The position numbers and the translations under genes are program-made. A DNA stretch of 64,000 nt, taken from the NCBI GenBank assembly GCA_965655095.1, contig OZ296652.1, positions 69,254,001-69,318,000 of the forward strand, given 5' to 3'. The DNA comes from Haplodiscus bocki. Its lineage: Eukaryota. Below are positions 1 to 43,680 of the stretch, piece after piece; positions within the stretch are counted from its first letter, which is position 1; the number at the start of each line of letters is the position of its first letter. Under the pieces are notes generated by a model, which was given only the letters and a program-made list of their open reading frames with translations, was not told where the DNA came from and made no database searches.

Positions 1-922
1 GCAATGCTACGATGCAACTTGCCAACAATTTAACCCTGGTAATGAAAGTCTCGACGTTGTGCTAGCCCTTGTTTTCATTTTGACGTGGACTTTGGACGCT
101 ATACGACTCTGTCGAAATTTTAAGTTTACAATATTTAACTGAGTGGTATTAGTAGTACCGTGGACCTTTCAAAAGTCATATTCGGTTGGTTTGTACACAA
201 GTGTTCTGTTGTCGCTAGTGTTGCGAAGCCCAGTTTCACCTCCGTGTTGTGATCTGTATAATGTTCCAAAATTAAATCAAATCTTGCCTACAAGATTTAT
301 TTGTAAGAAACTATACCAAGGAAATGTTTTAACAGTCTTTCTACTTTTCAAGCCCTATCACTTCAAAAGAACCGGGTCGACTTCTTCAATCAATGTATCA
401 ATCGACACTGTTTTATAGGCATCGGAGATTTGACAGGTAGATTTCGAAAACTGCAATCCATACTACTTTCGTTCGAATGTATGTGCTACAAACCTAAAAT
501 TGCTAGTTCTCTTCGAAAATGGTGTTTATTAACAACCCTTATTTATTAACATGCGGCTTTTTACGTGCATTGGAGACTTGATAGTCTGAATTTGACTAAA
601 TTGCAATTAGCGATAGCTTTTCTGTCTTTCAAAATCGCTTTTTTTTCCAGACAAAGTGCAGGGGTTTTGTCAAAAAAGATGGGAAAATTCTCGATCAACA
701 ATTTTTGAACCGCCGTAGACGGAAAATTTCGTCACGTTTTTTTGCTGATTTTTCTTTTTCTCAAAGTAGAATTGCGTTAATTGATTTGTCTCCGAAGTAC
801 AGAACAGTTGCAAATCAAACAAAAAGATTGATTTCTAATCTTGGCTCCAGGCCATTGTCATTAAAAGGAAGAATTTAATGTTTGTCGGAATGTATAAAGG
901 TGTTGTAGCAACTTATTGAACT

Positions 923-3900
923 TTAGTCGATTTGACTTTCGGCCAGAATGCAGAAAATCGCGGCGTTTTCAATGGTGCTTGTCGATTTAAGGGCTCTGCA
1001 TACTCTGATGCATAGAATGGAGCTCTTCAGTAGTGGAAAACTTATTTCCGTCTGGGTGAATGACATCACCTCGGAGTATTTTTCTTCACTTTTCTCGGAG
1101 ATTTTTTGGGCCAGTAGTTTCATGACTTTACTCGCCGAAGGACCTGCGCCTCCAGTTGACGAAAACACCAGGGGGTTGAAAGTGATGTTCTCGACTTCTC
1201 TAATCCTCTGCCCTTATTTGAGTTTTTTGAGTTCTTCGTGGTATTTGGAAGAGTCTCCTATGGTTTTGGGGCAGGTCTTCGCTAGCGGGTTGAAGATCTT
1301 GACATCGAAGAAAGTTCTTTCAAATACTGTTTCCCAGAGACCGTTGGCCTTTATGTCAAGACGGACGTCTTCCGCTGCAGTAGAGCTTCTATCGACTGTT
1401 TCCCTATCTGGGTGTTGCATTAACGGTTCCACGGCCACGTTACGGTAGATCTCACTCATCAAGTTCGCAAATGTGTCCCTTATTTCATTGTGGCCTTCAG
1501 GGTAGTGCAAGCCATGAGTCAGACTGAAAATCTCTCCGCATGGGCAGTTGAGGGGGGCATTTTTTGGAATTCAACTACATCTAAGGCTGAGACCCTCTCG
1601 AAATTCAGGTTTCTATAAATGAAATCCGTATCGCTTCAGCGGAAGTACATTAAACCAGGCCGATGCTCCTTTTCCCAATGCTCTTTCGCGTGCATATCTC
1701 TGCTCCGTGCTCAAGACACTTTTGATGTTTGATATTTTCTCGGCGATTTTCTTCTTCTTCGCGTTTAAAAGATCATCGAGGGTGCGCTTCTGCCAAAGTT
1801 CTGCAGTCAGAGGATCTTTCTCTTCCAGTGGCTCGGATAACTTTTTTGACAATTCGTAGTCGTCGTGATGGTTTTCTGGGCAGTCGGTGCCTAGTCCTCG
1901 GGAATTGAGTGGCAGTGAGATTACTTGCCTTTCTTTTGGTAAAGGTTATCCTCTTGAGGTTAGCGCCGGAACGATGGTTTCTCTGATTATTGCTTCCGAT
2001 GTTTTTACAAAACGGCTGAAGAAGAAGCTGTTGTTCGGGTAATGAAGTTCACTTTGAGTTTCACCTTTTTGGTTAGGCACGCATACGCATTCTGCGGTTT
2101 CGTTTTAGCGATGTCTCCTAGTTTTTAGTTTTGATAGCACTTTTTTCTGCTCTGCGCTTTTGCCGTCGAGGAAATTGTTGCATGTTTCTTGGGTGCCTAT
2201 GAAGGAGCCGAGTACTCTAGTTCCGAGCGTTATTTGCACGTTTGATCCTGCAAACGTCTCCAGGTCGAGGGGTCCATTTTTTCTTTCTTCACTATCATTT
2301 GGCATTTTGGGGCGTTGACGAAGATTCCATACCCAGGGCCTATGGTTTTTAGAGCCCTGAACGTTTCTTATATGTCGGATATCCGTCCACACGCATTTCC
2401 AACATCTGCATACCATTCATGGATTACGTTCACCTTTGAGATTTTCTGTATCAGGGGGAGGATCGCAACTCCGTACATGCACATTGCAAGCGGGTCACCT
2501 TGCGTGGTACCTTCGTCTGACCATATTGTTGTTCCGTTCACATGAAGCGGCGATGGGGATGAATATGAGTTTTTTACCCCATTAAAAAAAGCCGGGCAAA
2601 TGATCTTAATGTTTTCTATCGATAGTTTGCGATTAAGGAGGTTGAAAGCGTTTGTTGCTTCAATTAAAAGGACAGCTTCATTTTCTTCAAAATTTGCTCT
2701 AAGTGAGTGAATAGCGTGTTCTATGCCACAACGGTGTCCCATGCGAAGCTGCTGGTTTCCACCGGGTTGTTTCAAATCTGTCTGTATGCAACATACAATT
2801 GTTCTACCAATTATCCGCCGAAGTACCTCCCCAACACCGATTGGACGCACACCGGGACACTCATCTAGAAGTATTAGTCGACACGCGTTGTACGCTTGCA
2901 GAGTCATTGCTTCTTCTTCCTGAGTCGCGAGTCTTACAGCAAATTTTGCTACTGTTCGGCAAAGGGATTCCGAGCGACTTCCAAAAGCCGTTAGATACCG
3001 GCGCCATTCCAAGGCATCGACTCCAGATGGTCCGTGGCCACCACTGGTTTTAAGGGCGGCCCTTCGTATGACGTGTGCATCGATTCTGTCGATTATCGAA
3101 GGTGGTATGGTAGTGTAATTGGCCAGTCATCAAGGATAAGGGCAGGATCGTACGGTTGAGACGGATGTTTTGATTTGAGGATTTGCAAGACGGTTTCGCC
3201 GTTGGTTTTTTCTTCTAGGTCAAGGACCCCACGGTTTTGCTCATTTTGGAGTGTGCGTATGGCGTTTGCTACCTTTCCTGAATTCATTTGTCTGCCGAAT
3301 TCCATCGTCTCATCAAAAGGTAGTTTTCGTATCGTTCTAATTCGTTTCTGTAGTGCATGGCTCTCTTCAAAAAGTTTGTCAAAATGTCCATTTACCAAGA
3401 GTTGTAGCCGTTTTTGCAGTAGCTTATTCACAGATCCGTCACGGCGGTCGGTGGTTCGAGCTAGAATTAGGTGGGGGAGTACCATTGCGGCCTTAATTGA
3501 CGCTTCATGGTGTTTTTGTTTTCTGCAAGGGGTTGATGTGTCGTCTCCAGACATTTCAGGAAGAGTTCGCCAGTTTTGTTTTGCAGATGTTGAAGAATAT
3601 GGGTTTCCAGTGTACGATTTCCTCGTAGATCTTGTTCAGTTTCTGGTGGAATGAATAGTTAAGGTTTGTCCAGAATCTGTCGGGATTGCTGTCTTCAATG
3701 GAGCATGGTGAGGTGCCAGCAGCATGCCACCGGCGAGTCTCCATGTTTCCCGCCATCTTTGTCCCCACCCTCGATTTTTGTACTGCCTGGTCCATTCGAC
3801 GAGATGTGGCCAGGACTCTCAGGGTACAATAGGTGAAGACATTGGCGCTCTAAGCATTCAATACAAGTCCAGTTATGATTTTCAAGGTTTTTGATTTCCT

Positions 3901-4067
3901 CGGTTGTCAGGTTGGTGCATTTTTTGTGGAACCAATTTTCGCAGGTTTTGCATAGAATGGACCATTGTCTCTTTGTTACTGATTTATTGCAAGCTCCACA
4001 CGACCATGTGCTCATCATGTCATTTCTTACCGGAAACTATTTAATAAGTTTATCACAACAATTAGGC
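923..4067 (-). mobile_element. CRE-like (RLE-type) non-LTR retrotransposon, 5'-complete but frameshifted: PHD finger, reverse transcriptase, restriction-like endonuclease
   Basis: Colinear minus-strand fragments. PHD: CGAC..ILCKTCENWFHKKC..WTCIEC (3695-4018). RT: ACRLILLDECPGVRPIGVGEVLRRII, NAFN, EGTTQGDPLAM, WYADV (2368-3012). GASAWFNVLPL (1613-1852). RLE: HNEIRD..VEP..RLDIKANGLW..FFDVKIFNP..HEELKK (1214-1510) and FSSTGG..SFPLLKS (923-1168). The 3' boundary beyond the stop is unresolved; no poly(A) or TSD seen. Confidence 0.88.
4037..4067 (-). other. Putative retro-copied spliced leader at the 5' end of the CRE-like element
   Basis: Minus strand reads GCCTAATTGTTGTGATAAACTTATTAAATAG, then 18 nt, then the ATG of the PHD ORF (4018). 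It is 29/31 identical to 40646-40676 and is not followed by a GT donor. Confidence 0.75.
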
Positions 4068-4160
4068 TTGCGATAAAGTTGCAAGTAGTAATTGCTCAAC
4101 TCCGGGTCTGTTCCCTTTTTGTTTTGGTTAAAGTTGTATTCGGTTCGTAAATTTCAGATT

Positions 4161-4553
4161 ATGTTTGGAATTCGTAGGAGTGCAGCTACTGCAGTTCGCT
4201 TTGCCTATTGCGCACGTACTCTAAACTTCAAACTTTCGACTGTTCCGAGTGAAGACCCAGATATCATGCGTGCTAGACTTCTGTATCAGAGCCGCAAACG
4301 CGGAATTCGGGAAAACGATCTTCTTCTGAGTTCATTTGCGAACATATATCTTGATTTCATGACACCTGATCAACTCAAGCAGTACGATAACATACTCAAT
4401 GCGGTGGACAATGAATGGGATCTGTACAAATATATGGTGGGAAGTGAAGAGACGCCTGAATTTCTTGTATCGGAAGTTATGTCTCTCTTGAAATCATTTG
4501 CTTCAAATCCCGACCGCGAGCAGCGACTTTTTATGCCGGAGTTGAAACAATAG
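4161..4553 (+). CDS. SDHAF2: Succinate dehydrogenase assembly factor 2 (Sdh5), single exon, 130 aa
   Basis: RARLLYQSRKRGIRENDLLLSSFA and QYDNILN..NEWDLYKY are the Sdh5 family signature. The Arg/Ala/Ser-rich N-terminus resembles a mitochondrial presequence. The true ATG is at 4161, after tttcag; AATAAA follows at about 4585 and 4605. Confidence 0.95.
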   Translation: MFGIRRSAATAVRFAYCARTLNFKLSTVPSEDPDIMRARLLYQSRKRGIRENDLLLSSFANIYLDFMTPDQLKQYDNILNAVDNEWDLYKYMVGSEETPEFLVSEVMSLLKSFASNPDREQRLFMPELKQ

Positions 4554-35300: not shown

Positions 35301-38300
35301 AAGATAGTCTAATCATGCTCCGGAAAATCACTGTTTTAGTAGAGCTTATAAAGGCAGCGCTGATTCAGCGGATTGGGAGCGCTAATCCATGCTGGTAATT
35401 TTCATTTTCTCAGAAACGGCGCTGAACAACGTTGAAGCGCGTCAATCTTGAAAACACCGCTGTTTAGCGCTGATAGTTTTTCGGATGCCAACCCGGAATT
35501 TTAAAATCAGTTCATATTTTTTTTGAAAATATCAAATACCAAATTTTTTGTGATACCGGTTTTCTGCATATAGAAAAACGTTCTCCAAAAAATCGATTAA
35601 CAAAATGTTCGTGATACCGTCTGTATGTTTTTCTTGATTGTTGGAGCATTGTTTAATTTGGCGGGAATTTTTTTGGAGTGTAAATATGAGAAACGCGGTA
35701 AATTCATAAAGACGGTCTTGTCTTTACAGTAAAGTGTCTTCATAGTAAACCTGAAAGTACGTTTTTGCACTAGTTGATGGCCAAACGAATTCGTGAAAAA
35801 GTGTACTCGAAAATTTTTGGGGAGAAATTTTTCTCGGCAATATTTCGTCAAAAACAACGCCGAAATTTATGAACTTTCGTTTTTTCCGACTTTTCACTTC
35901 GATTTTTTGTTTCATTTGACTGTAAGTAAGATCAGTTCTGCCTACGATTGTCGTTGAGTTCATTTTGAAAACTTTGGCTGTGAAAGTGAAGTTTCGAGAA
36001 ATCATGGTCAGAAAAAGTACAAACATTTTTCGTGACGACGAATGTCTTTTTTGACAGGTATTTGACTTCATAGACTCCAGTTTTGTGTGACTGCCTTTGG
36101 AGTGGATGAAATTTGTTTTTTCGAGCTAAAGTTGATGCAAATTTAGACTTATTACGATACATTGTAAATTGCTATTTGTAATTCGAATTGGTTTACTGTA
36201 CTCCCAAGGTTTTTCCTCTGAAACTACTGCTGCTATTGAAATCATCCAATGCTTACTCAGAAGTTCGCATTATGGAGAATCTCCAAAAAATCAGAGATGT
36301 CCCGTTATCAATCATACTTTTACAGGGATTATCTTGACTTCTTTGAAAAATGAACGTTTTAACTTTCGTCTTTCTCAATTTTTTTCTGTAAGACGACTTG
36401 TCGGATTGCAATTATCCAGTACTCTTTCCAAAGCCCACAATTTAGATTTATGGATTATCGGCAATGTCTTGTTTCTTGCTTTTACTTCGAAATGTTTTGA
36501 AATAGTTGTGGTTCAATTTTTTTACTGGCGCCTTTTCTCAATACCGTTTTTGTCATAAACTATCGGTTGAATCGCAGACATCCTGTGCTCGTTCAAAAAA
36601 CCGCGATTTAGAGCATTACTGAGTAGCAGGGATGTCTACTTTCGTACTTCTGACGCGAAATGTCTTTTTGAAAGAGCTGTAAATTTGGAAGACTTGCAAT
36701 TTCAAACAAACTTGTGCCTTTTTTGAAAGTTCAAACCAGCTCAAATTTTTTCCAAGACTGTCTAGAGGATCACTCAAAAAGCCTCCGAAGAATTAAATTG
36801 GGAAGCATCATTGATGACTTTTTGGTGATCTTTTTATATGTTGTCCTAACATTTCAAAAGTGTTCAAAATTCTTTTAAAAAATGTTCTCGGCGGTAAAAG
36901 TTTGCTTTGAGGCCATCCAGCGTTATATTTGAATTCTGGTCAGAAGAAATTTTGTTGATCAAACTTTTGAACATTTGTATGTTTGATATCTCTTTTTTGT
37001 AAAAAAATTCTCTTTCTATAACGAAAAGTGTAAATCAAGTGTGGGCTCAATGTACAGGGTCTGCGTTAGACTCACTTTAAAGGAAACTTTTCAGTTCACT
37101 TTTGAATACCTGAAGATTTACAGTTGTATCTCGCATGTCTAAGGGCAGTGAGTTCCACTTCAGAGAAATGGAATGAAAAAGATTTGGAGGAACATGAAAC
37201 AAATGCTACCTTCCCCAGAAGTATTGTTTGATTCGAACGGCTGTTCAATCAGAAGTTTCCCGTGTGTAACTTTATTCTGTCCACAAATGATTTTTTTCCA
37301 TTGTTGATGTACTGGAAAAAATAGGTCAATCAGTTCAATATGTTGCCGAAAACCAAGTAAACTTCTCTGTATTCTGAAATCAAATGAAGCCTTCATACTG
37401 GAACGAAACTAAACAGATTTCAAAGGCTAATTCATCTGTTTGTCTATTGATAGTGATAACGGTGACGTATTTTGCAGCAGAATATTCCAAGTGACTCGAA
37501 ACAAGAGCATGGAAAAGCATGAGAATTTATGTCGTCTAGTTTCAATGGTTTTGATAACCACAGCCATTTTCTCCAACACTTGTTTGGTATCGGTCTGGAA
37601 ATCTAGGATCTACGTCCTTATCAATGCTTACACCTAGGTATTTACACTTGATCCGACTTTTCAGTTTTGGATGAGCCTAAAACAACTGTTTCTGAGTCCT
37701 GCAGACGTTTATGATTTTTACGAGAAAAATTGATGAATTCTGTTTTACTGTCGTTCCAATGCAACCGGCTACGCGAGAAGTATTATTCCAGTTTTACCAG
37801 ATTTTACTGTGAGCGGTTAAGTGCAATTTCTGATTCACTATCACTGCAATAGAGCCAGCAGTCATCAGCAAACTGTATTTTACGAGCATTTTCACTAACT
37901 TGATTCGAGAGGTCATTAACATTTAAGTTGAACAGCAGTGGCCCTAGCACAGTTCCCTGAGGAACACCTCGTTTCAGTTCAGTCCAATCGGAGACCATTC
38001 CATTTACTGGAACTTGCCGTAATCTCTTCGTTAAGAAACTCTCAATACGTTCTACAGTCGAATGAAAGAAATTCAGTGATTCCAGTTTTTCCAGAATTAT
38101 GTGAAGAGTCAAAAGCTTTAGATAAATTCAAAAGTAAAGCATGAACTAATTTGCCATTTTATATCTCATGACGAAGTGTTTCAATGAAAGGAAGAATGGC
38201 ATCTTGCGATGAGACCCTACTCCTAAATCCAAACTGAAACCTCTGTAGGGATGCCTTTATTTTAAACATAGGTTGTTCTTCCTCCGTATAACGTCAGGTC

Positions 38301-41300
38301 AAGGGTTTTCGAGAATGATGGTAATGAGAACTGAGATGGAACATGGGAGGATAATTCGTTGCATCCAGAACATGAACTTTTTTGTGAGTCGGTATTATGG
38401 AAGCTATTCTTAACTTTGCAGGGAAGCTGCAGGTTTTTATGAATTGATTCAAAATAAAAGTTAGTTGTGGAACAAGAATTTGTTTACAGTCAACAATTCC
38501 ACAGTCAAGAACTTCACAAGGAGCCGTAGTTTATGAGGGTCTAAATCTCTAAAGGTATCGAAGGAATCTTTCTCTGATACGTCCCAAAAACAAAAAGAAG
38601 CATTACCGGCTGTAAAAAGCGGAGCTTCTATCAGTTTGTCAAAATATTATCGTAGTTCTCAGAAAAGCCTACTTGACGTAAATTTGTCATAATTGGCTGT
38701 CAACTGTTGCAACGAATTTCGTTCGGTTCTTAGATTAAGGTAGGAAAAAACACATTTGGGAGAATGACTCCTGCTTATCTTTTATAACATTTGCGAGTTT
38801 CAATCTGCTTTTGCTAAAAGCACACCAATTTTCAGCAGATGATTGTTGACGGTATCTCTCATAGGCGAGTTGGTGTTCAGCGAGCAAACTTTTGCACTCA
38901 TGATCGAACCAGGTTTCTTTAAATTTTTCGGTGTTTTTTTCTCAACGAATAGTTTTTTTGATGGGAGCATGCTTTTCCGTAGCTCTGGACAAAAACACAA
39001 ACATATCATTGGAGGTTGAACAAAGGTTCATTTTGAACCGTGAGAGATCTTACAATGTTTTGCAAAAAACTATTGTGTCATATTTTTTCTTGTCAAATCT
39101 CTGAAATATCATGCGACTTAGTTTTTCAACAGTTATATCTGTAAATAGAGCACAACCGAAATGGTCGATTTTGGAAGGACTATTAAAGACAGCTTTTCTC
39201 GTCCGCTGTTTTTTTCCGTTAGATTATTATCAATGTTTCTCCGTTGTGATGCATATGCGTGTTGGCAAAATTGGACCAGCTACTGAAAAACCGTAGGGTA
39301 AAATCACAGTTTCTAGTTTTTCACGTTCAAGAATTGTGAAAAAATCTAAATTGTAGTCACCCATCTTGGTGATCGATAGCGATTCGCGTGAAGCGTAATC
39401 AATATCACTCAACCGTTGTTCGAGGAAGTCTTTTTGGTTAGCTTTCAGAGGATTATACGTTACATTCCGAAATATTTTTGATCTACACTTTTTAGAAAAG
39501 TTATAACGGCATTGAACGCCTTCTGATTCGAATTTGGATTTAACGAGAACGTTCATATCTTTACGTTTTTTGGTGCTAGTCTGAAAGGGACAAAAAGCAT
39601 TACACCGCTCTTCCATAAGGATGAATCATCATCAGGCGGAAGCCGGGTTTCAGAGATACCAATTATACATTTTCGCCCACGTCAGTTACAAAAAGGTTTC
39701 AATTGCCGCCGTGTTTTTTGTTATACCTTGAAAGTTCAGGTGAATGAAGGATAGTGTATTTTTAATACTTCAACAGACAACTTGGAAAAACTTTCATAGC
39801 TAATTTCAGGTCCAGGATTTTCCTCAATGTCACCGCAGTTTTTCATGACTGAGGAAGCGTAGAGGAAAGTGTTTGTCACATATCCCAAGCTTGCACAAAG
39901 AATGCTTTTTCATGCCATTGCAGGCATTAGAGAATAGCTCATTATCCTTATTTTGTAGTTTGCGAAGATTATCAAACACCAGCTTTTCATTAACCTGCAT
40001 GAATACAATAAATTTCTCATTTGCAGATACCACACCGCAAAGATCATCTCTACTTCTCAGGTCATGGGTTCTGTTTGCACGTAAAGGAATCAAGTCATCA
40101 TTTACATAGATACTGATTTCGTTAAAGTTTTCTTTTGTGCTTCATCAATTGGTGGTTAGTAGCGCGCCCAACTAACTTGGCAATCAGAGGTTTCGGGCCC
40201 TTACCTCCGCCCGGTAGACGGTGACAGGTAATAACATCATTAGCAGTGATAGTGACTCCGGCTTTTTCTGCCTCACTAACCACCTTGACGGAGACGTCCT
40301 CATCTGGCTCCTCCTCTACACCAAAGATGCGCTCGTTCTCCCTTCGCCCGTACTGCTCGCTGCTTTTGTACTCTATGATTGGCGACCGGTCATCCACAGT
40401 ATAAGTTTTCATCTTTTACAGCTCCTCAACAGCTCAAAAGCCTCAAAGCAAGGGTCTTGTGAAGAAGTTTTTGGGAATGAGCCTCGGCACCCAAACGTTT
40501 GTCCAGATGATGCATGCAGCATTCCCGTCCACTCCAGACCCAGTGCACTCCACAAGATGGTTGCTGCCATCGTACTTCTTTGCTGGGTTTGGCGCAGGTG
40601 TTGTTGTTGCGCGTCGGCGCTATCAGTTGTTTTACAGTGAATCTACTACTTAATAAGTTTATCGCAACAATTAGGCTCATTAGTGTACTGTGGAAAGTCA
40701 TACTTATCGCCGAAAGCAGTTTATAAAAGTATGTTCAGTTTCGTATGAACTCAATGAAGTTTCAAAAGTTGATGGACTTGGCTCTATTTGATTCCTTACT
40801 TATAAATATTTAGTGGATAATTGAACAAGACGGCCAGCTAGCACTGGCATATTTTTCGCCCAACTACAAATATTTTGATCAACTTTTGCAAACGGTTAAA
40901 AACAAAACTACTGTATTGATATTAGTTTTCAAAGAGTTTTTTTACAAACATCAGTTGTACCACTGATTTCTGTACTTTATGCAAAAGGGTATCACTATTA
41001 TCCGTTGAAATATTTTCGTCTCACAGTGCCAAAAAATTTCGTCGAGAAACCCTTCTCTGTTTCAGAAAATTTCTGGTATCGAAAAATGTTAGGGATAAGA
41101 GAGGGGGCGGGAATCACGATTTTCCTTCAAAATTGTTTTGTCTCACAGTACCGAATCTTTTCGCAGAGGAACCTTTCTGTGTTTCAGAAAGTTTCCGGTA
41201 TCGGAAAATTTTATGGCTAAGAGGGGAATATGACCATTTTCAATTGAAAATTTCTGGCAGTACCGAATTTTTTCGTAGGGGAGCCCTTTAGTGTTTCACT

Positions 41301-43680
41301 AATTTCGGGTATCGAAAGATTTTATGCTTCAGAGAATTATGTCACGATTTTGTGTCGAAATTTTTTTGTCTCAGTGCCGAAAAATTTCGTGGGCATCCTT
41401 TCAATGTTTCAGAAAAATTGGGGTATCGAAAAATCGTTATAAATCGTAAAAATACTAGGCACGACAGTGACTCGAACCCCGAACTTACTGCTTGAGAACC
41501 TTGTTGTCCTAAGCCTACTGCTGTCATTTATTTTTGAATAAAAAGAGTTGGCAATTTTGGTCTGAAAAAAAAGAAAAACGACCCTACTGAATGAATAATT
41601 TTTCTTGCATATTACATATGCGGCAAAAAATAATAATATTGTGATAATTTTAGTGTGCGAGAAATGCATCAAGAGTGGGAGAAATGGTACGAAGAGAAAA
41701 AACAGAAGGAAGAAGCAGAAAAGGCTACGAAGGAAAAGAAAGCTTCATCCGCTGCCTCGCCAGAGAAAGTTAGTACTCTCGAAACCAATGATGTTAAATG
41801 ATACATGATATCTTTTTATGGTGTAGCATGCATTGTATCATTTTATTTTGCTTCTGCGATGTGATATTTCAAAAATTAGTTCTATTTTACTAATTCTCGA
41901 AATTAATTCATGTTAAGATAAGGAGTTCGGCAGCTATTCAGGATGTTTAATAAAAGGGGAATTTTATCCATAATGCAATGAAATCATTTTTTAATGAAAC
42001 TTTCTGGATCATATAAAAACCAGCGGTGATTGTCAAATTTACGCAAGGCAAAGTAGAGGTAGCAACTGACGATTAGTTCTATTAACTAATGATTTGTCAT
42101 TTTGTACCTTTTGATCCTTTTTTAAAGTTGAGGAAGCCCGGGACGCTCAAGTCGCAAAGGCTTGAAACATAAAAGGGGTTTATTAAACATGGGGTGTTAA
42201 AAACAGAAAAATCCAATAATTGGAAGTTTGTCCCGAAAAAAAATGGACTTGCCTATCATAACATGGGGTGTTAAAAACAGAAAAATCCAATAATTGGAAG
42301 TTTTTCCCGAAAAAAATGGACTTGCCTAGTCTCGAACCAGTATCTGTGGCTCAAAAACTTTTTGTCCTACCCTATAGACCACCAAGGACTTCTAGAGTTC
42401 CGATCGTTTTAAGTTGGTCATGAAATTGAAAAAACCTCATAAAATTAAAAAATCCTTTTGGACACTATAGCAGTGAAAAATATACTGTAATGGTCGAATT
42501 TTTATTACAGTAAAGCACCGGCTAAAGATGATGAAATTTCGAATCATGTTTATTTTAAGAAACGTATCGTTTAACATTTCTGCTCAAAAGTGCTTCATAT
42601 TTACTGATGAATATTGAGTGTTTCTAAAATTGTTGATCCTATTTTCAGAAAGCAGCTTCAAATTTGAAAGAGTGCAAAAGTATTTTGGCTCAATGCAGAA
42701 TTAAAGATGACGGTGATGCCGAAACTGCTATCGAAATTTCACGAGCATTGGCTGAAGCTCATGTGCAATACAAGCTGCGCTACATGAAAGCAGAGGTAAA
42801 TATTCAATTAAAACATTTTGACGTGGGCGTTGGTTGAGGTGGACAAAAATAATGGTCGCTTTATAATTAGACTTATGAAAACTTAAATCTTTTCGAGTAT
42901 TAGGTCATCAGCAGTTGTCTAAAAATACTTATCTGAAATCGCCAAAATGATGCCGTTTTGATTTGTAGTATCTGAGTATGAAGTAATGCTAAGCGACAAC
43001 AGAAGTATTCTATTATTAATTCAACTCCAGAAGTTGGCCAATGATGAAGCACGCCACAAGACCTATTATTTAGTATCAAGAAGTATGTCAAGTCTATGGA
43101 TTCTGAAATAAAAAGTTGAAATTATTTGGCTGTCATTTTTCAGGAAAAGACGAAATTAGTTCAGGATACATACAAGGTGGTACTTGGTTATCTTCGTGAA
43201 ATGCAGTCGGGAAAACTTCCGAATTTGAACATGAGTCAAGTCATGCAACAACAGGCTGCACAACCCATGTATCCATACCCCAGTGGCATGCCACCTAATA
43301 TGTACCCGGCACAGCCCGGACCGTATCCTTATCCCGTTGCAAATCCGCAATACCCCAACCCGTATGGGTCTTACCCACAGCCTGCTGCAGCACCTCCTGC
43401 TGGTGCACCCAACACTTCTCAGCCTCCTTGGGTCACTCAGCAACAACAGTCATCGTCAAGTGCCACCAATACGACATCTCAAGAAGAGAGCACTAACCCT
43501 TTGATGATGGGCAGCAACGCTAACTCACAACAAACTCAACACAGACTTCAACCTGCTGCCTCAACCCAAGGTGCTTATGTCCCCACAAGTTCTTACTATC
43601 AAGGACCTGTTGCTGGAGCGCACACGCCTGGACAAGCTCTTCCTGCAAGAAATGCTACAAACCCGACTTCTGTTGCATAA
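5351..43680 (+). CDS. Uncharacterised zinc-finger protein, about 746 aa, 11 exons: U1/matrin-type finger, EPIIGL..YYCELC finger domain, Arg-rich region and Pro/Gln/Tyr-rich tail
   Basis: Exons 5351-5512, 7077-7145, 7255-7366, 7616-7758, 7858-8007, 8209-8477, 9880-10100, 10983-11298, 41654-41768, 42649-42795, 43144-43680 join with consistent phases into 2241 nt with no internal stop. Junctions rebuild NYCE|PCDLQLNNSVSYKQHLLGLRH, EPIIG|LDALTE..YYCELC..HVTSTQH and FFQKY|VREMHQEWEKW. All introns are GT-AG except one GC-AG. Confidence 0.8.
5675..6297. mobile_element. Foldback/MITE-like element, about 620-bp imperfect palindrome in intron 1
   Basis: The arms are reverse complements, e.g. tgtgacgaaaattaca (~5783) with tgtaattttcgtcaca (~6190), ctagtttacaatggttt with aaaccattttaaactag, and ttcattcacacgtgaa (~5903) with ttcacgtgtgaatgaa (~6004). 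Confidence 0.75.
6335..6898 (+). mobile_element. Internally deleted hAT DNA transposon
   Basis: TIRs ctgggttggtatgtttaaaac and gtttaaaacaccaaccctg; 8-bp TSD ttttccgt/atttccgt (7 of 8). The internal remnant translates VVSDNAANISHMRELL..YGCQAHIANLVAKDF, matching the hAT transposase TDNAxN and CxAHxxNL motifs. Confidence 0.85.
10280..10560 (-). repeat. Degenerate copy of the dispersed repeat family also at about 4960-5120 and 41000-41440
   Basis: Shares aaaatttcgtaagggtacccttt / cctttcacgtataccga-type motifs with those regions; boundaries are approximate. Confidence 0.45.
12180..12720. mobile_element. SINE-like dispersed repeat with a tRNA-like segment (12252-12325, minus strand) and a GCGAAGC..GCTTCGC hairpin motif
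   Basis: The minus strand has A-box-like TGGCAGTCAGTAG and B-box GGTTCGAGC but no acceptor stem. The body is homologous to about 120-250, 47610-47800, 55470-55640 and 62880-63420. Confidence 0.55.
12863..13030 (-). repeat. 3' LTR (degenerate, partly deleted)
   Basis: TGTTGTACCTCTGAC..tgaccgtcattggagtttgcaggttgttt aligns with TGTTTCACCTCTGAC..tgacagtcatcggagtttgcgagttgttt at 33676-33896; adjacent to the PPT. Confidence 0.7.
15776..33560 (-). repeat. Head-to-tail array of a 3676-3685-bp LTR-less Gypsy internal unit: four complete units plus one with a deletion of about 615 bp
   Basis: Identical ORFs recur at 15611, 19289, 22965, 26642 and 30319. Junctions lie at about 15775, 19453, 23129, 26806 and 30483, where gag-region sequence joins post-integrase sequence. 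Confidence 0.95.
17900..18037. repeat. Inverted duplication forming a 35-bp perfect-stem hairpin; repeated at 21576, 25253 and 28930
   Basis: TGTTTACATGAGATGGTCCTCATTTGACCTTTGCA (17900-17934) and its exact reverse complement (17969-18003). Confidence 0.95.
33661..33675 (-). promoter_or_regulatory. Primer-binding site, probably tRNA-Ser
   Basis: The minus strand reads ..GAAACA|TGGCGCAGTCAGCCG: the LTR end CA is followed directly by TGG, complementary to a tRNA 3' end ..GACTGCGCCA typical of tRNA-Ser. Confidence 0.7.
33676..33937 (-). repeat. 5' LTR, about 262 bp, TG..CA
   Basis: Starts TGTTTCAC next to the PBS and is homologous to 12863-13030. The outer end tatcACA is the best candidate, but no TSD match was found. 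Confidence 0.7.
37150..40676 (-). mobile_element. CR1/L2-type LINE (ORF1 plus APE-RT ORF2), 5'-complete, decayed
   Basis: ORF1: degenerate PHD (TCAK..VECTGSG..AAC), then EQYGRRENERIFGVEE..CHRLP..PKPLIAKLV (40122-40412). Endonuclease: SET, YNP, MGDYNLDF, PTR (39230-39660). RT: LNLSKAFD, GVPQGTVLGPLLFNL, QFADD (37804-38140). The 3' boundary is approximate. Confidence 0.88.
40646..40676 (-). other. Putative retro-copied spliced leader at the 5' end of the LINE
   Basis: Minus strand reads GCCTAATTGTTGCGATAAACTTATTAAGTAG, then 22 nt, then ATA GCG CCG (probably a mutated ATG) opening the PHD-like ORF1. Similarity to 4037-4067 is confined to these 31 nt. Confidence 0.72.
41000..41600 (+). repeat. 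Tandem degenerate repeat of about 120 bp (tgtctcacagtaccgaa..aaccttt..gtttcagaaa..ggtatcg) followed by a tRNA-like segment
   Basis: About four units at about 41017, 41140, 41258 and 41367. A minus-strand B-box (actcgaacc on the + strand) lies at about 41470. Confidence 0.7.
42186..42328. repeat. 74-bp tandem duplication at the edge of a SINE-like element (related copy at about 48300-48420)
   Basis: aacatggggtgttaaaaacagaaaaatccaataattggaagttt..aatggacttgccta occurs at 42186 and 42260. Confidence 0.9.

What the first reader, a model, noticed from the sequence alone, without database searches (positions are those of the whole stretch)
3695..4067. Two unrelated non-LTR retrotransposons start with the same 31-nt spliced-leader-like sequence: candidate promoterless, trans-splicing-dependent retrotransposition system
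Seen: the CRE-like RLE element (4037-4067) and the CR1/L2 APE element (40646-40676) belong to different superfamilies and show no other nucleotide similarity that I can see. Both begin with GCCTAATTGTTG(T/C)GATAAACTTATTAA(A/G)TAG (29/31 identical), in sense orientation, 18 and 22 nt before the first ORF. That leaves essentially no 5'UTR for an internal promoter. Known: SL trans-splicing adds a capped leader to mRNAs; relict SLs mark retrogenes in dinoflagellates; CRE/SLACS/CZAR and NeSL elements exploit SL genes. The 31-mer also matches my unverified recollection of the convolutid acoel SL. Inference: the element RNAs were trans-spliced and reverse-transcribed to the cap. Because the leader ends in AT-rich sequence plus TAG, its DNA copy could itself act as the 3' splice acceptor. 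Any read-through transcript would then be cut and re-capped to regenerate the same 5' end each cycle, removing the need for a promoter or 5' ribozyme.
Basis: partly seen in the sequence, partly recalled or inferred. Interest (0 to 1): 0.92.

Follow-up and report, generated by a model that had tools for sequence, protein, structure and literature searches.

The report
Host spliced leader caps LINE copies
The 31-base tag at the start of both jumping genes is the worm's own spliced leader, copied into DNA because LINE messenger RNAs are trans-spliced before they are reverse-transcribed; this happens genome-wide and repeatedly, but nothing here shows that the DNA copy of the tag renews itself or makes a promoter unnecessary.

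Summary
The 31-mer sits on the minus strand at 4037-4067 (exact) and 40646-40676 (2 mismatches). It heads two LINEs that share nothing else.

It is the published spliced leader (SL) of the acoel Symsagittifera roscoffensis. This genome holds about 696 SL RNA genes, in tandem arrays linked to 5S rRNA. About 1,100 further SL copies are dispersed.

All 30 dispersed copies I sampled mark the exact 5' end of a LINE, from at least 15 families. The flanks are unique. The target-site duplication lies outside the SL. ORF1 often starts 5-66 nt after it.

SL addition is recurrent:
- Related elements carry the SL at different junctions.
- SL-spacer-SL composites exist.
- The window's second element is a short form. 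It was made by a new trans-splicing event at a TTTCAG acceptor that, in its relatives, follows an older SL relic and a hairpin.

The claim that the relic's own TAG is the acceptor, and that no promoter is needed, is untested, because no RNA runs were available.

A 2025 flatworm paper mentions SL fragments in retrotransposons in passing, and Hydra transposon transcripts are known to be trans-spliced. Other readers of this scan noted the same pattern elsewhere in this genome.

The parts
4037..4067 (-). SL relic at the 5' end of element 1, identical to the canonical 31-nt spliced leader
   Evidence: published SL in PMC9911081
4068..4076 (-). 9-nt junction filler between the target-site duplication and the SL. 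Its last base is the A found at -1 of most relics, and it resembles an inverted copy of SL nt 10-19.
   Evidence: A at -1 in 23 of 28 relics
4077..4084 (-). 5' copy of the 8-bp target-site duplication of element 1 (TTGCAACT)
   Evidence: only two occurrences between 700 and 4200; a 16-bp duplication brackets the family copy in L086 in the same way
806..813 (-). 3' copy of the same target-site duplication. Seven filler bases (814-820) separate it from the element's end.
821..4036 (-). Body of element 1: a decayed ~3.2-kb single-ORF LINE with no APE domain
   Evidence: 3' boundary set by where 40 family copies stop aligning; 5' boundary; frames broken
3695..4018 (-). N-terminal PHD-finger ORF of element 1; its ATG is 18 nt after the SL
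   Evidence: PF00628, E 1.5e-8
2371..3126 (-). Reverse transcriptase fragment of element 1
   Evidence: RVT_1, E 4.6e-4, below the Pfam cutoff in this decayed copy; full-length relatives P0007, P0085 and P0102 have RVT_1 upstream of the C-terminal domain
1217..1570 (-). CCHC plus PD-(D/E)xK restriction-like endonuclease domain of element 1
   Evidence: 1825 relatives; conserved C.C..H...C, RHNEIRD, VEP, RLDI and FDV(K/R) motifs; the only PDB hits of the profile are R2 protein residues 938-988, E 0.3
40646..40676 (-). SL relic at the 5' end of element 2 (29 of 31 bases match); the base at -1 (40677) is A
40643..40645 (-). Extra TAG between the SL and the family's junction point, probably a 3-nt duplication
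   Evidence: relatives run TTTCAG then ATT(T/C/A)ACTG; a short-form relative, L084, has the SL joined directly to ATTAACTG
37036..40642 (-). Body of element 2: a decayed ~3.6-kb APE-type LINE
   Evidence: 3' boundary; 5' alignments
40125..40415 (-). ORF1 fragment of element 2 carrying an EQYGRR..I.GV motif
   Evidence: the same motif occurs in L004 and family E
39808..39834 (-). 2A-like ribosome-skipping motif GDIEENPGP
   Evidence: translation; 2A peptides in APE-type LINEs are known from the literature (from memory)
39233..39625 (-). APE-like endonuclease fragment of element 2
   Evidence: family consensus shows YNP, GDYNLD, PTR, IDYI and TDH in canonical order; hhalign against other families' APE gives E 0.004; no Pfam hit
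37807..38127 (-). Reverse transcriptase fragment of element 2
   Evidence: RVT_1, E 1.3e-11

Best explanation
Both 31-mers are DNA relics of the host spliced leader. In this acoel, LINE pre-mRNAs are SL trans-spliced at an acceptor just upstream of ORF1, as about 30% of host mRNAs are. The capped SL-LINE mRNA is the retrotransposition template, and the reverse transcriptase usually copies it to its first base. Each new full-length insertion therefore begins with the SL.

The process is recurrent, not a single ancient capture. SL-bearing copies are transcribed again, at least sometimes from upstream of the relic. They are trans-spliced again at whichever acceptor is used, and they re-insert.

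Element 1 belongs to a family that burst from a source with a canonical SL directly before its 5' UTR. Element 2 is a derived short form. Its relatives carry an older SL relic, a hairpin arm complementary to SL nt 19-31, and a TTTCAG acceptor. A new SL was joined at that acceptor.

Shown here: the identity of the SL, the SL gene, that the SL lies inside the insertion, the genome-wide scale, multiple junctions, and composites. Inferred: the RNA steps themselves.
For: - Identity: the published SL is the same sequence, and 10,433 genes are reported as trans-spliced.
- SL RNA genes: the 31-mer followed by GTAAGT, the Sm-like stretch AGUUUUAUUUGA and a stem-loop, about 696 copies, with 5S rRNA 214 nt downstream.
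- Scale: 1818 genomic matches at up to 3 mismatches against 0 in the control, so about 1,100 are dispersed.
- The SL is the element's own 5' end. All 30 sampled dispersed copies have unique upstream flanks apart from one duplicated pair, and all have LINE ORFs downstream.
- Element 1 family. All 17 other 5'-complete copies examined carry the SL, 8 of them 5'-truncated by 2-17 nt. Relic decay is 5.5% against 4.2% in the body. Target-site duplications lie outside the SL.
- The base at -1 is A in 23 of 28 relics, as in the SL gene.
- Recurrence. Family E shows two junctions. Family A has one short copy spliced at CTTCAG. L002/L008 and L010/L011 share an ORF1 but have different SL-capped 5' ends. 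SL-spacer-SL composites occur in L003, in the B2 family with at least 8 copies, and at loci with two upstream SLs.
- Element 2 family. 24 of 39 copies stop aligning at AG plus ATTCACTG. Four independent copies plus one duplicated pair show the long leader, and L084 shows the short form.
Against:
- Only 30 of about 1,100 dispersed relics were inspected, all exact matches from one chromosome. That biases the sample towards young copies.
- Whether the short or the long form came first is inferred from parsimony.
- The extra TAG in element 2 is not explained by simple splicing at the TTTCAG site.
Confidence: 0.85

Rival explanations
1. The DNA copy of the leader is itself the 3' splice acceptor. 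Any read-through transcript is cut after the relic's TAG and given a fresh SL, so the same 5' end is regenerated every cycle and the element needs no promoter.
For: - 5' UTRs are almost only the SL: the ORF1 ATG lies 5-66 nt after it in families D, L002, A, F and element 1.
- Composites prove that SL-bearing copies are transcribed from upstream and re-spliced.
- Splicing at the relic's own TAG would leave no trace in DNA. That fits the rarity of visible re-splicing products: one direct SL-SL tandem and one family A short copy.
- Young copies of diverged hairpin-leader families still carry a canonical SL.
Against: - Every re-splicing event that can be seen used another acceptor: TTTCAG or TTTGAG downstream, or a site 62-200 nt upstream.
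- The B2 family kept an internal relic with an intact AG through at least 8 copies.
- In families A, C and element 2's family, the relic's TAG is buried at the top of a 14-16 bp stem.
- The sequence before the TAG is a poor match to the TTTCAG seen at the other acceptors.
- The spread of a chimera that acquired 205 nt of another family's 5' end suggests that the 5' region matters.
Confidence: 0.25
2. Capture followed by inheritance. Trans-splicing put the SL on an ancestral RNA of each lineage. Since then the relic has simply been the first 31 nt of the element, transcribed from an internal promoter that starts at or near relic nt 1. Further trans-splicing is occasional noise.
For: - The star-like burst of the element 1 family, with all copies starting from a canonical SL, fits a single master.
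- Long hairpin leaders are faithfully transmitted, with family-specific loops.
- The chimeric B2 family retains both SLs.
- From memory: LINE internal promoters within the first tens of bases are known in Drosophila, and the nematode SL sequence is itself a promoter element of the SL gene.
Against: - Many independent junctions within related lineages show that re-addition is not rare.
- There is very little non-coding sequence to hold a promoter.
- No promoter was identified, and the Rfam gathering-threshold scan found nothing at these 5' ends.
Confidence: 0.35
3. Dead-end products. The true sources are a few SL-less master copies with an upstream promoter and outron. SL-bearing insertions are promoterless by-products that never transpose again, like spliced L1 insertions (SpIREs) in humans.
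For: Star phylogeny of the element 1 family. Only 7 of 39 element 2 relatives have the SL directly at the short-form junction.
Against: - Composites with an inner relic and an outer SL prove that SL-bearing DNA copies served as sources.
- The long forms in element 2's family themselves begin with an SL relic.
- No SL-less longer copy was seen among the 17 other 5'-complete element 1 relatives.
Confidence: 0.1
4. Template switching. The LINE reverse transcriptase jumps from the end of LINE RNA onto the abundant SL RNA, as in human U6-L1 chimeras, without any trans-splicing.
For: Partial direct or inverted SL fragments sit in front of full relics in L008, L020, L073, L031-L034, L010, L012, L086 and window 4068-4076. 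So jumps at the RNA 5' end do occur.
Against: The main relic always ends exactly at the splice donor and never continues into the SL RNA intron. Its junction with the element is constant within a family and lies just before ORF1.
Confidence: 0.03
5. Target-site origin. The elements insert into SL genes or into an SL-like repeat (like CRE, SLACS, CZAR or NeSL), and the 31-mer is target DNA.
For: An earlier follow-up of this scan (s1-364264, not checked here) reports a different LINE that piles up at nt 17 of SL genes in this genome.
Against: Upstream flanks are unique. The target-site duplications lie outside the SL. The 3' flanks do not continue the SL gene. Relics are variably truncated from the 5' side only.
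Confidence: 0.01

Closest known systems
Relict spliced leaders of dinoflagellate retrogenes (DinoSL relicts)
   Same: An SL added to RNA by trans-splicing is found in genomic DNA at the 5' edge of retro-copies. Serial relics record repeated rounds of transcription, trans-splicing and retroposition.
   Different: In dinoflagellates the copies are host genes, and retroposition is described as independent of RT-encoding genes (10.1101/783902). Here 30 of 30 sampled relics head autonomous LINEs. Direct tandem relics are nearly absent (1); serial relics are separated by 16-200 nt spacers instead.
Partial SL sequences in LTR and LINE elements of parasitic flatworms (PMC12582326, 2025)
   Same: The authors discarded 597 SL-like loci lying in mobile elements. 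[quoted passage not shown]
   Different: That is one sentence in a paper about SL genes, with no anatomy. Shown here for an acoel: the relic is the exact 5' terminus inside the target-site duplication, it is constitutive for whole families of two endonuclease types, it was added repeatedly, and in some families it is built into a hairpin leader.
SL trans-splicing of transposon transcripts in Hydra (PMC12220107, 2025)
   Same: About 30% of transposon Iso-Seq reads carry the host SL, so transposon RNAs use the host trans-splicing machinery.
   Different: That is evidence at the RNA level only. It makes no claim that the SL is fixed in genomic copies or defines family 5' ends.
SL-gene-targeting LINEs (CRE1/2, SLACS, CZAR, NeSL-1)
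   Same: RLE-type LINEs that have an intimate link with spliced-leader genes.
   Different: Those elements insert into SL genes, so SL sequence flanks them as target DNA. Element 1 is dispersed, has unique flanks, and carries the complete SL as its own 5' end.
Human L1 spliced integrated retrotransposed elements (SpIREs) and U6-L1 chimeras
   Same: RNA processing or template jumps that occur before or during reverse transcription become fixed at the 5' end of new LINE copies.
   Different: SpIREs arise by cis-splicing within the 5' UTR and lose promoter function. Here a host exon is added in trans, and SL-bearing copies demonstrably transpose again.
5' HDV-like ribozymes of R2 and L1Tc
   Same: A way for a LINE to obtain a defined 5' end from a co-transcript without relying on its own transcription start.
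   Different: That mechanism is self-cleavage, not trans-splicing. No ribozyme family was detected in this window at Rfam's gathering thresholds.

Membership tests
Spliced leader / SL RNA gene | The leader is identical to the 5' tag found on many unrelated mRNAs of the organism | not testable with these tools
   No RNA run was served. The published transcriptome-derived SL of S. roscoffensis is this 31-mer plus one A, and 30.2% of genes are trans-spliced (PMC9911081).
Spliced leader / SL RNA gene | A small-RNA gene with the leader, a GT donor, a Sm-type site and stem-loops | tested here: met
   The 31-mer is followed by GTAAGT. The SL's 3' half pairs with the intron, the U-rich stretch AGUUUUAUUUGA follows, and a 10-bp stem-loop comes after it. 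The interrupted-U motif resembles the flatworm Sm-like site quoted in PMC12582326.
Spliced leader / SL RNA gene | Tandemly repeated gene units, often linked to 5S rRNA | tested here: met
   About 696 units, period 1.7-2.6 kb, on contig 9. 5S rRNA at 117.8 bits lies 214 nt downstream in L040 and L052.
Retro-copy with relict SL | The SL lies at the 5' boundary of the inserted sequence, inside the target-site duplication | tested here: met
   Unique flanks. An 8-bp duplication brackets window element 1 and a 16-bp duplication brackets L086. For element 2 there is only a possible 6-bp duplication.
Retro-copy with relict SL | Serial relics from repeated rounds | tested here: met
   L003 (62-nt spacer), the B2 family (about 200-nt spacer, at least 8 copies) and loci with two upstream SLs. 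Only one direct tandem was found.
RLE-type non-LTR retrotransposon (element 1) | A reverse transcriptase followed by a CCHC motif and a PD-(D/E)xK endonuclease, with no APE | tested here: inconclusive
   RVT_1 matches only below the Pfam cutoff in the window copy, but clearly in full-length relatives. The motifs are conserved in 16 relatives. The only PDB hits are the R2 protein at the matching position, but at E 0.3. No APE signal was found in element 1.
CRE / SLACS / CZAR / NeSL (site-specific SL-gene LINEs) | Insertion at a fixed site within SL RNA genes | tested here: not met
   18 family copies have 18 different flanks and none lies in an SL gene. The clade was not resolved phylogenetically.
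APE-type LINE, CR1/L2-like (element 2) | An APE endonuclease N-terminal to the RT | tested here: inconclusive
   RVT_1 at E 1.3e-11. APE motifs occur in canonical order in the family consensus. hhalign gives E 0.004 but probability 8.6%. There is no Pfam hit and the AlphaFold model is unusable at pLDDT 36. Clade not tested.
   No RNA runs were available. The DNA evidence is neutral to mildly negative.

The most novel reading that the evidence does not exclude
Acoel LINEs have turned the host spliced leader into a portable, self-renewing 5' end. The DNA relic, in several families locked into a hairpin with an anti-SL arm followed by a TTTCAG site, would direct trans-splicing of any read-through transcript. 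The element would then regain a capped, translatable, full-length 5' end each cycle without a promoter of its own. The anti-SL arm would act as a guide that recruits or aligns the SL RNA.
Probability: 0.2. Interest if true: 0.9.

Novelty: new variant of a known kind. Interest (0 to 1): 0.62.

Why it matters
LINEs face a standing problem: a new copy must carry its own start signal, because upstream promoters are not copied. Known solutions are internal promoters and 5' ribozymes.

This genome shows that many LINE families of two endonuclease types routinely pass through SL trans-splicing. About 1,100 SL relics record this. It is a natural archive of 5'-end formation, with multiple acceptors, serial relics and chimeric leaders, and it makes a third solution directly testable with existing RNA data.

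It also has a practical consequence. SL-based gene annotation and SL-gene searches in acoels will be contaminated by LINE 5' ends.

Tried and rejected
- **RNA test.** The look-up of sequencing runs returned only four DNA-like runs held as contigs. Read laying at 80% likeness showed that contigs break at the SL, and the loose ends at the junction were not listed. It gave only depth: the SL region is roughly 2,000-4,000 times single-copy depth.
- **Genome access.** The about 1,100 relics could therefore not be classified exhaustively. The 5' ends of element 2's family were instead obtained from public assemblies, one of which proved to be the same genome (L086 is 100% identical to L067).
- **Second SL gene with a longer exon (SL plus TTTGAG): rejected.** There are 22 copies, all dispersed, with no array.
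- **Dinoflagellate-style direct tandem relics: rejected as a general feature.** One case was found.
- **Truncated-SL copies of element 1 as a clade (which would show inheritance): rejected.** The tree is a star.
- **Covariation in the leader hairpin.** Too little variation to test.
- **Domain assignment.** PDB, Pfam and Atlas searches with single pieces of both elements gave nothing useful. The fold of the APE-like piece failed.
- **Target-site duplication of element 2.** Only a 6-mer was found, which is not significant.
Full report
**Observation.** The 31-mer occurs twice in the window, both times on the minus strand. The copy at 4037-4067 is exact and the copy at 40646-40676 has two mismatches. 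None is expected by chance. Each copy lies in sense orientation at the head of a decayed retroelement. The two elements share no other significant similarity by blastn or tblastx. In element 2 the frame opens about 26 nt after the leader, but this copy has no ATG there.

**What the 31-mer is.** A full-text search for its first 12 bases finds only the Symsagittifera roscoffensis genome paper. That paper reconstructed the same sequence, plus one A, as the spliced leader from unmapped transcript 5' ends. It reports 10,433 trans-spliced genes, 30.2% of the total (PMC9911081).

In the window's own 1.5-Gb genome the 31-mer occurs 1818 times at up to 3 mismatches, against 0 for the reversed control. 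About 696 of these are followed by GTAAGTATTCC. They form tandem arrays with a period of 1.7-2.6 kb, mainly on contig 9. In the repeat unit the SL's 3' half pairs with the intron. A U-rich stretch, AGUUUUAUUUGA, and a stem-loop follow. A 5S rRNA gene lies 214 nt downstream. This is a classical SL RNA gene, so about 1,100 copies of the SL are dispersed.

**The two elements.**
- *Element 1* spans 821-4067 and is about 3.2 kb. It encodes a PHD finger, an RT fragment and a C-terminal domain with 1825 relatives. In full-length relatives of 1015-1124 aa this domain follows RVT_1. It carries conserved CCHC, RHN, EP, LD and D-V-K/R motifs. A profile of it hits only the R2 protein in the PDB, at the CCHC/RLE position but weakly, E 0.3. 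No APE was found. I read it as an RLE-type LINE. It is not site-specific, so it is not CRE- or NeSL-like in lifestyle.
- *Element 2* spans 37036-40676 and is about 3.6 kb. It has an ORF1 fragment, a canonical 2A-like motif (GDIEENPGP) and a clear RT, RVT_1 at E 1.3e-11. It also has an endonuclease region whose family consensus shows the APE motifs in canonical order. Statistical support for the APE is weak.

**The SL belongs to the insertion.**
- In 30 exact dispersed copies taken in genome order from contig 1, upstream flanks are unique apart from one duplicated pair. Downstream sequences fall into at least 15 families.
- Every one of the 30 has LINE-type coding sequence downstream: PHD or esterase-like ORF1, RRM-like ORF1, or APE. 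None is a host-gene retro-copy.
- In element 1's family, all 17 other 5'-complete copies examined carry the SL. Eight of them have lost 2-17 nt from the 5' side only. Each sits in a different flank.
- The relics differ from the canonical SL by 5.5%, while the bodies show 4.2% private change. The SL was therefore canonical at insertion and has decayed neutrally since.
- A full copy from a second assembly of the same genome (L086, 100% identical to L067) is bracketed by a 16-bp target-site duplication. The window copy is bracketed by an 8-bp one, at 4077-4084 and 806-813. In both cases the duplication lies outside the SL, with a few filler bases at each junction.
- The base before the relic is A in 23 of 28 independent insertions, against a background of 30%. 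It is also A in the SL gene. The real SL is therefore probably 32 nt long, and the copies reach the first transcribed base.
- The relic never runs on into the SL RNA intron. That excludes simple template switching onto SL RNA.
- Short direct or inverted SL fragments in front of some relics show that jumps do occur at the RNA's end.

**SL addition is recurrent.**
- Family E has two junctions, with or without TTTGAG.
- Family A normally reads SL, hairpin, CTTCAG. I predicted a copy with the SL joined directly behind CTTCAG, and exactly one exists.
- L002 and L008 share an ORF1 but have different SL-capped 5' ends. So do L010 and L011.
- L003 is SL, 62 nt found at only one other (77%-identical) locus, an older SL relic, then the element. 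A young chimeric family (B2, at least 8 copies) is SL, 205 nt of family B, an SL relic, then another element. Other loci have two upstream SLs.
- These composites prove that SL-bearing DNA copies are transcribed from upstream of the relic, trans-spliced again and re-inserted.

**Element 2 is itself such a product.** Only 7 of 39 relatives align through the SL. Twenty-four stop at AG plus ATTCACTG with a non-T base before it. I recovered 5' ends of relatives from public assemblies. Six loci (L082, L083, L089, L091, L088, L092), of which L082 and L083 are one duplicated pair, begin with a long leader. The long leader consists of:
- an SL relic;
- a C-N-N-CGG loop;
- an arm complementary to SL nt 19-31;
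- then TTTCAG, followed by the body.

L084 has the SL joined directly to the body. The window copy is this short form plus three extra bases.

Families A and C have the same architecture, with 14-16 bp stems and z-scores of -3 to -4.5. Another reader of this scan had flagged this structured leader.

**What is not shown.**
That mechanism is re-splicing at the relic's own TAG, which would make a promoter unnecessary.
- The DNA evidence is neutral to mildly negative. All visible re-splicing used other acceptors. B2 keeps an internal relic with an intact AG. In hairpin families the TAG sits in a stem.
- In favour of the model, splicing at the relic's TAG would be invisible in DNA. ORF1 starts only 5-66 nt after the SL in several families. 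Young copies of diverged hairpin families still carry a canonical SL.
- I put the self-renewing model at about 0.25 and an internal promoter that starts at the relic at about 0.35.
- The dead-end model is refuted for several families by the composites.

**Comparison with what is known, and novelty.**
- Relict SLs in retro-copies are classical in dinoflagellates, but there they mark host genes. One study concludes that retroposition and RT-encoding genes are independent.
- Hydra transposon transcripts are trans-spliced (PMC12220107).
- A 2025 survey of parasitic flatworm SL genes notes in one sentence that 597 discarded loci in LTR and LINE elements hold partial leaders. It suggests they may be integrated trans-spliced retrotransposons (PMC12582326).
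- I found no paper describing whole LINE families whose genomic 5' terminus is the SL, serial spaced relics, or an anti-SL hairpin leader.
- I therefore rate this as a new variant of a known kind. Several first readers of this scan noted the same pattern in other windows of this genome.

**Limits.**
- The sample of relics is small and biased towards exact, young copies.
- Clade assignment of both elements is unresolved.

Noticed in passing
L001, L012, L026 (first ~60 nt after position 1500 of the oriented locus); L088, L089, L091, L092: Three LINE families (A, C and element 2's family) share a structured leader. SL nt 19-31 pair with 13 nt that follow a short loop (CUUCGG, CUGCGG, CAUCGG, CCUCGG or a 10-nt loop), and a TTTCAG acceptor comes next. 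The arm is nearly the reverse complement of the SL. Its function is unknown: it could be a guide for SL RNA, a mask for the relic's AG, or a mimic of SL RNA stem I.
   Followed up: partly
L040 and L052, 1501-1863 (genome contig 9, about 72.47-72.69+ Mb): The SL RNA genes form a giant tandem array of about 696 units in which each unit also carries a 5S rRNA gene 214 nt downstream on the same strand.
   Followed up: partly
window 4068 and 40677; position -1 of L001-L030: The base before the SL relic is A in 23 of 28 insertions and also in the SL gene. The mature SL is therefore probably 32 nt long and starts with A, one base longer at the 5' end than the published sequence.
   Followed up: partly
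window 39808-39834 (-): A canonical 2A-like ribosome-skipping motif (GDIEENPGP) lies between the ORF1-like and endonuclease regions of element 2.
   Followed up: no
window 4092-4553 (+): A host gene for succinate dehydrogenase assembly factor 2 (Pfam Sdh5, E 6e-21) starts head-to-head only about 95 nt from the 5' end of element 1. A TTTCAG acceptor lies just before its ATG at 4161.
   Followed up: partly
window 40821-41480: An extremely abundant repeat lies just upstream of element 2. Its summed contig depth is about 36,000 times that of the adjacent single-copy flank. It has internal units of about 120 bp and, by eye, a tRNA-like box-B end near 41450-41500. ARAGORN finds no tRNA there.
   Followed up: partly
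L017 (oriented 1501-1860) and at least 8 similar loci listed: A young chimeric LINE family (B2) has this 5' end: SL, the first 205 nt of family B, a second SL relic, then the body of another family. This is either a template switch at a capped 5' end or a read-through capture.
   Followed up: partly
L008, L020, L073, L031-L034 (direct); L010, L012, L086, window 4068-4076 (inverted): About a fifth of 5' junctions carry an extra 8-20 nt partial SL fragment, direct or inverted, immediately before the full relic. This suggests template jumps or snap-back synthesis when the reverse transcriptase reaches the capped end. The inverted class alone is 4 of 31, against 4.5% at control positions.
   Followed up: partly
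L082 and L083, 2998 to end: These two loci of the same genome are a 5.5-kb segmental duplication, 92% identical. It contains an element 2 relative with a tRNA-like sequence about 100 nt upstream of its leader.
   Followed up: no
L070 and L075, 8 nt before the relic: Two element 1 relatives have 7-8 nt before the SL that match positions -8 to -1 of the SL RNA gene (TGCTTTTA). This hints at occasional SL RNAs that start further upstream, or at chance.
   Followed up: no
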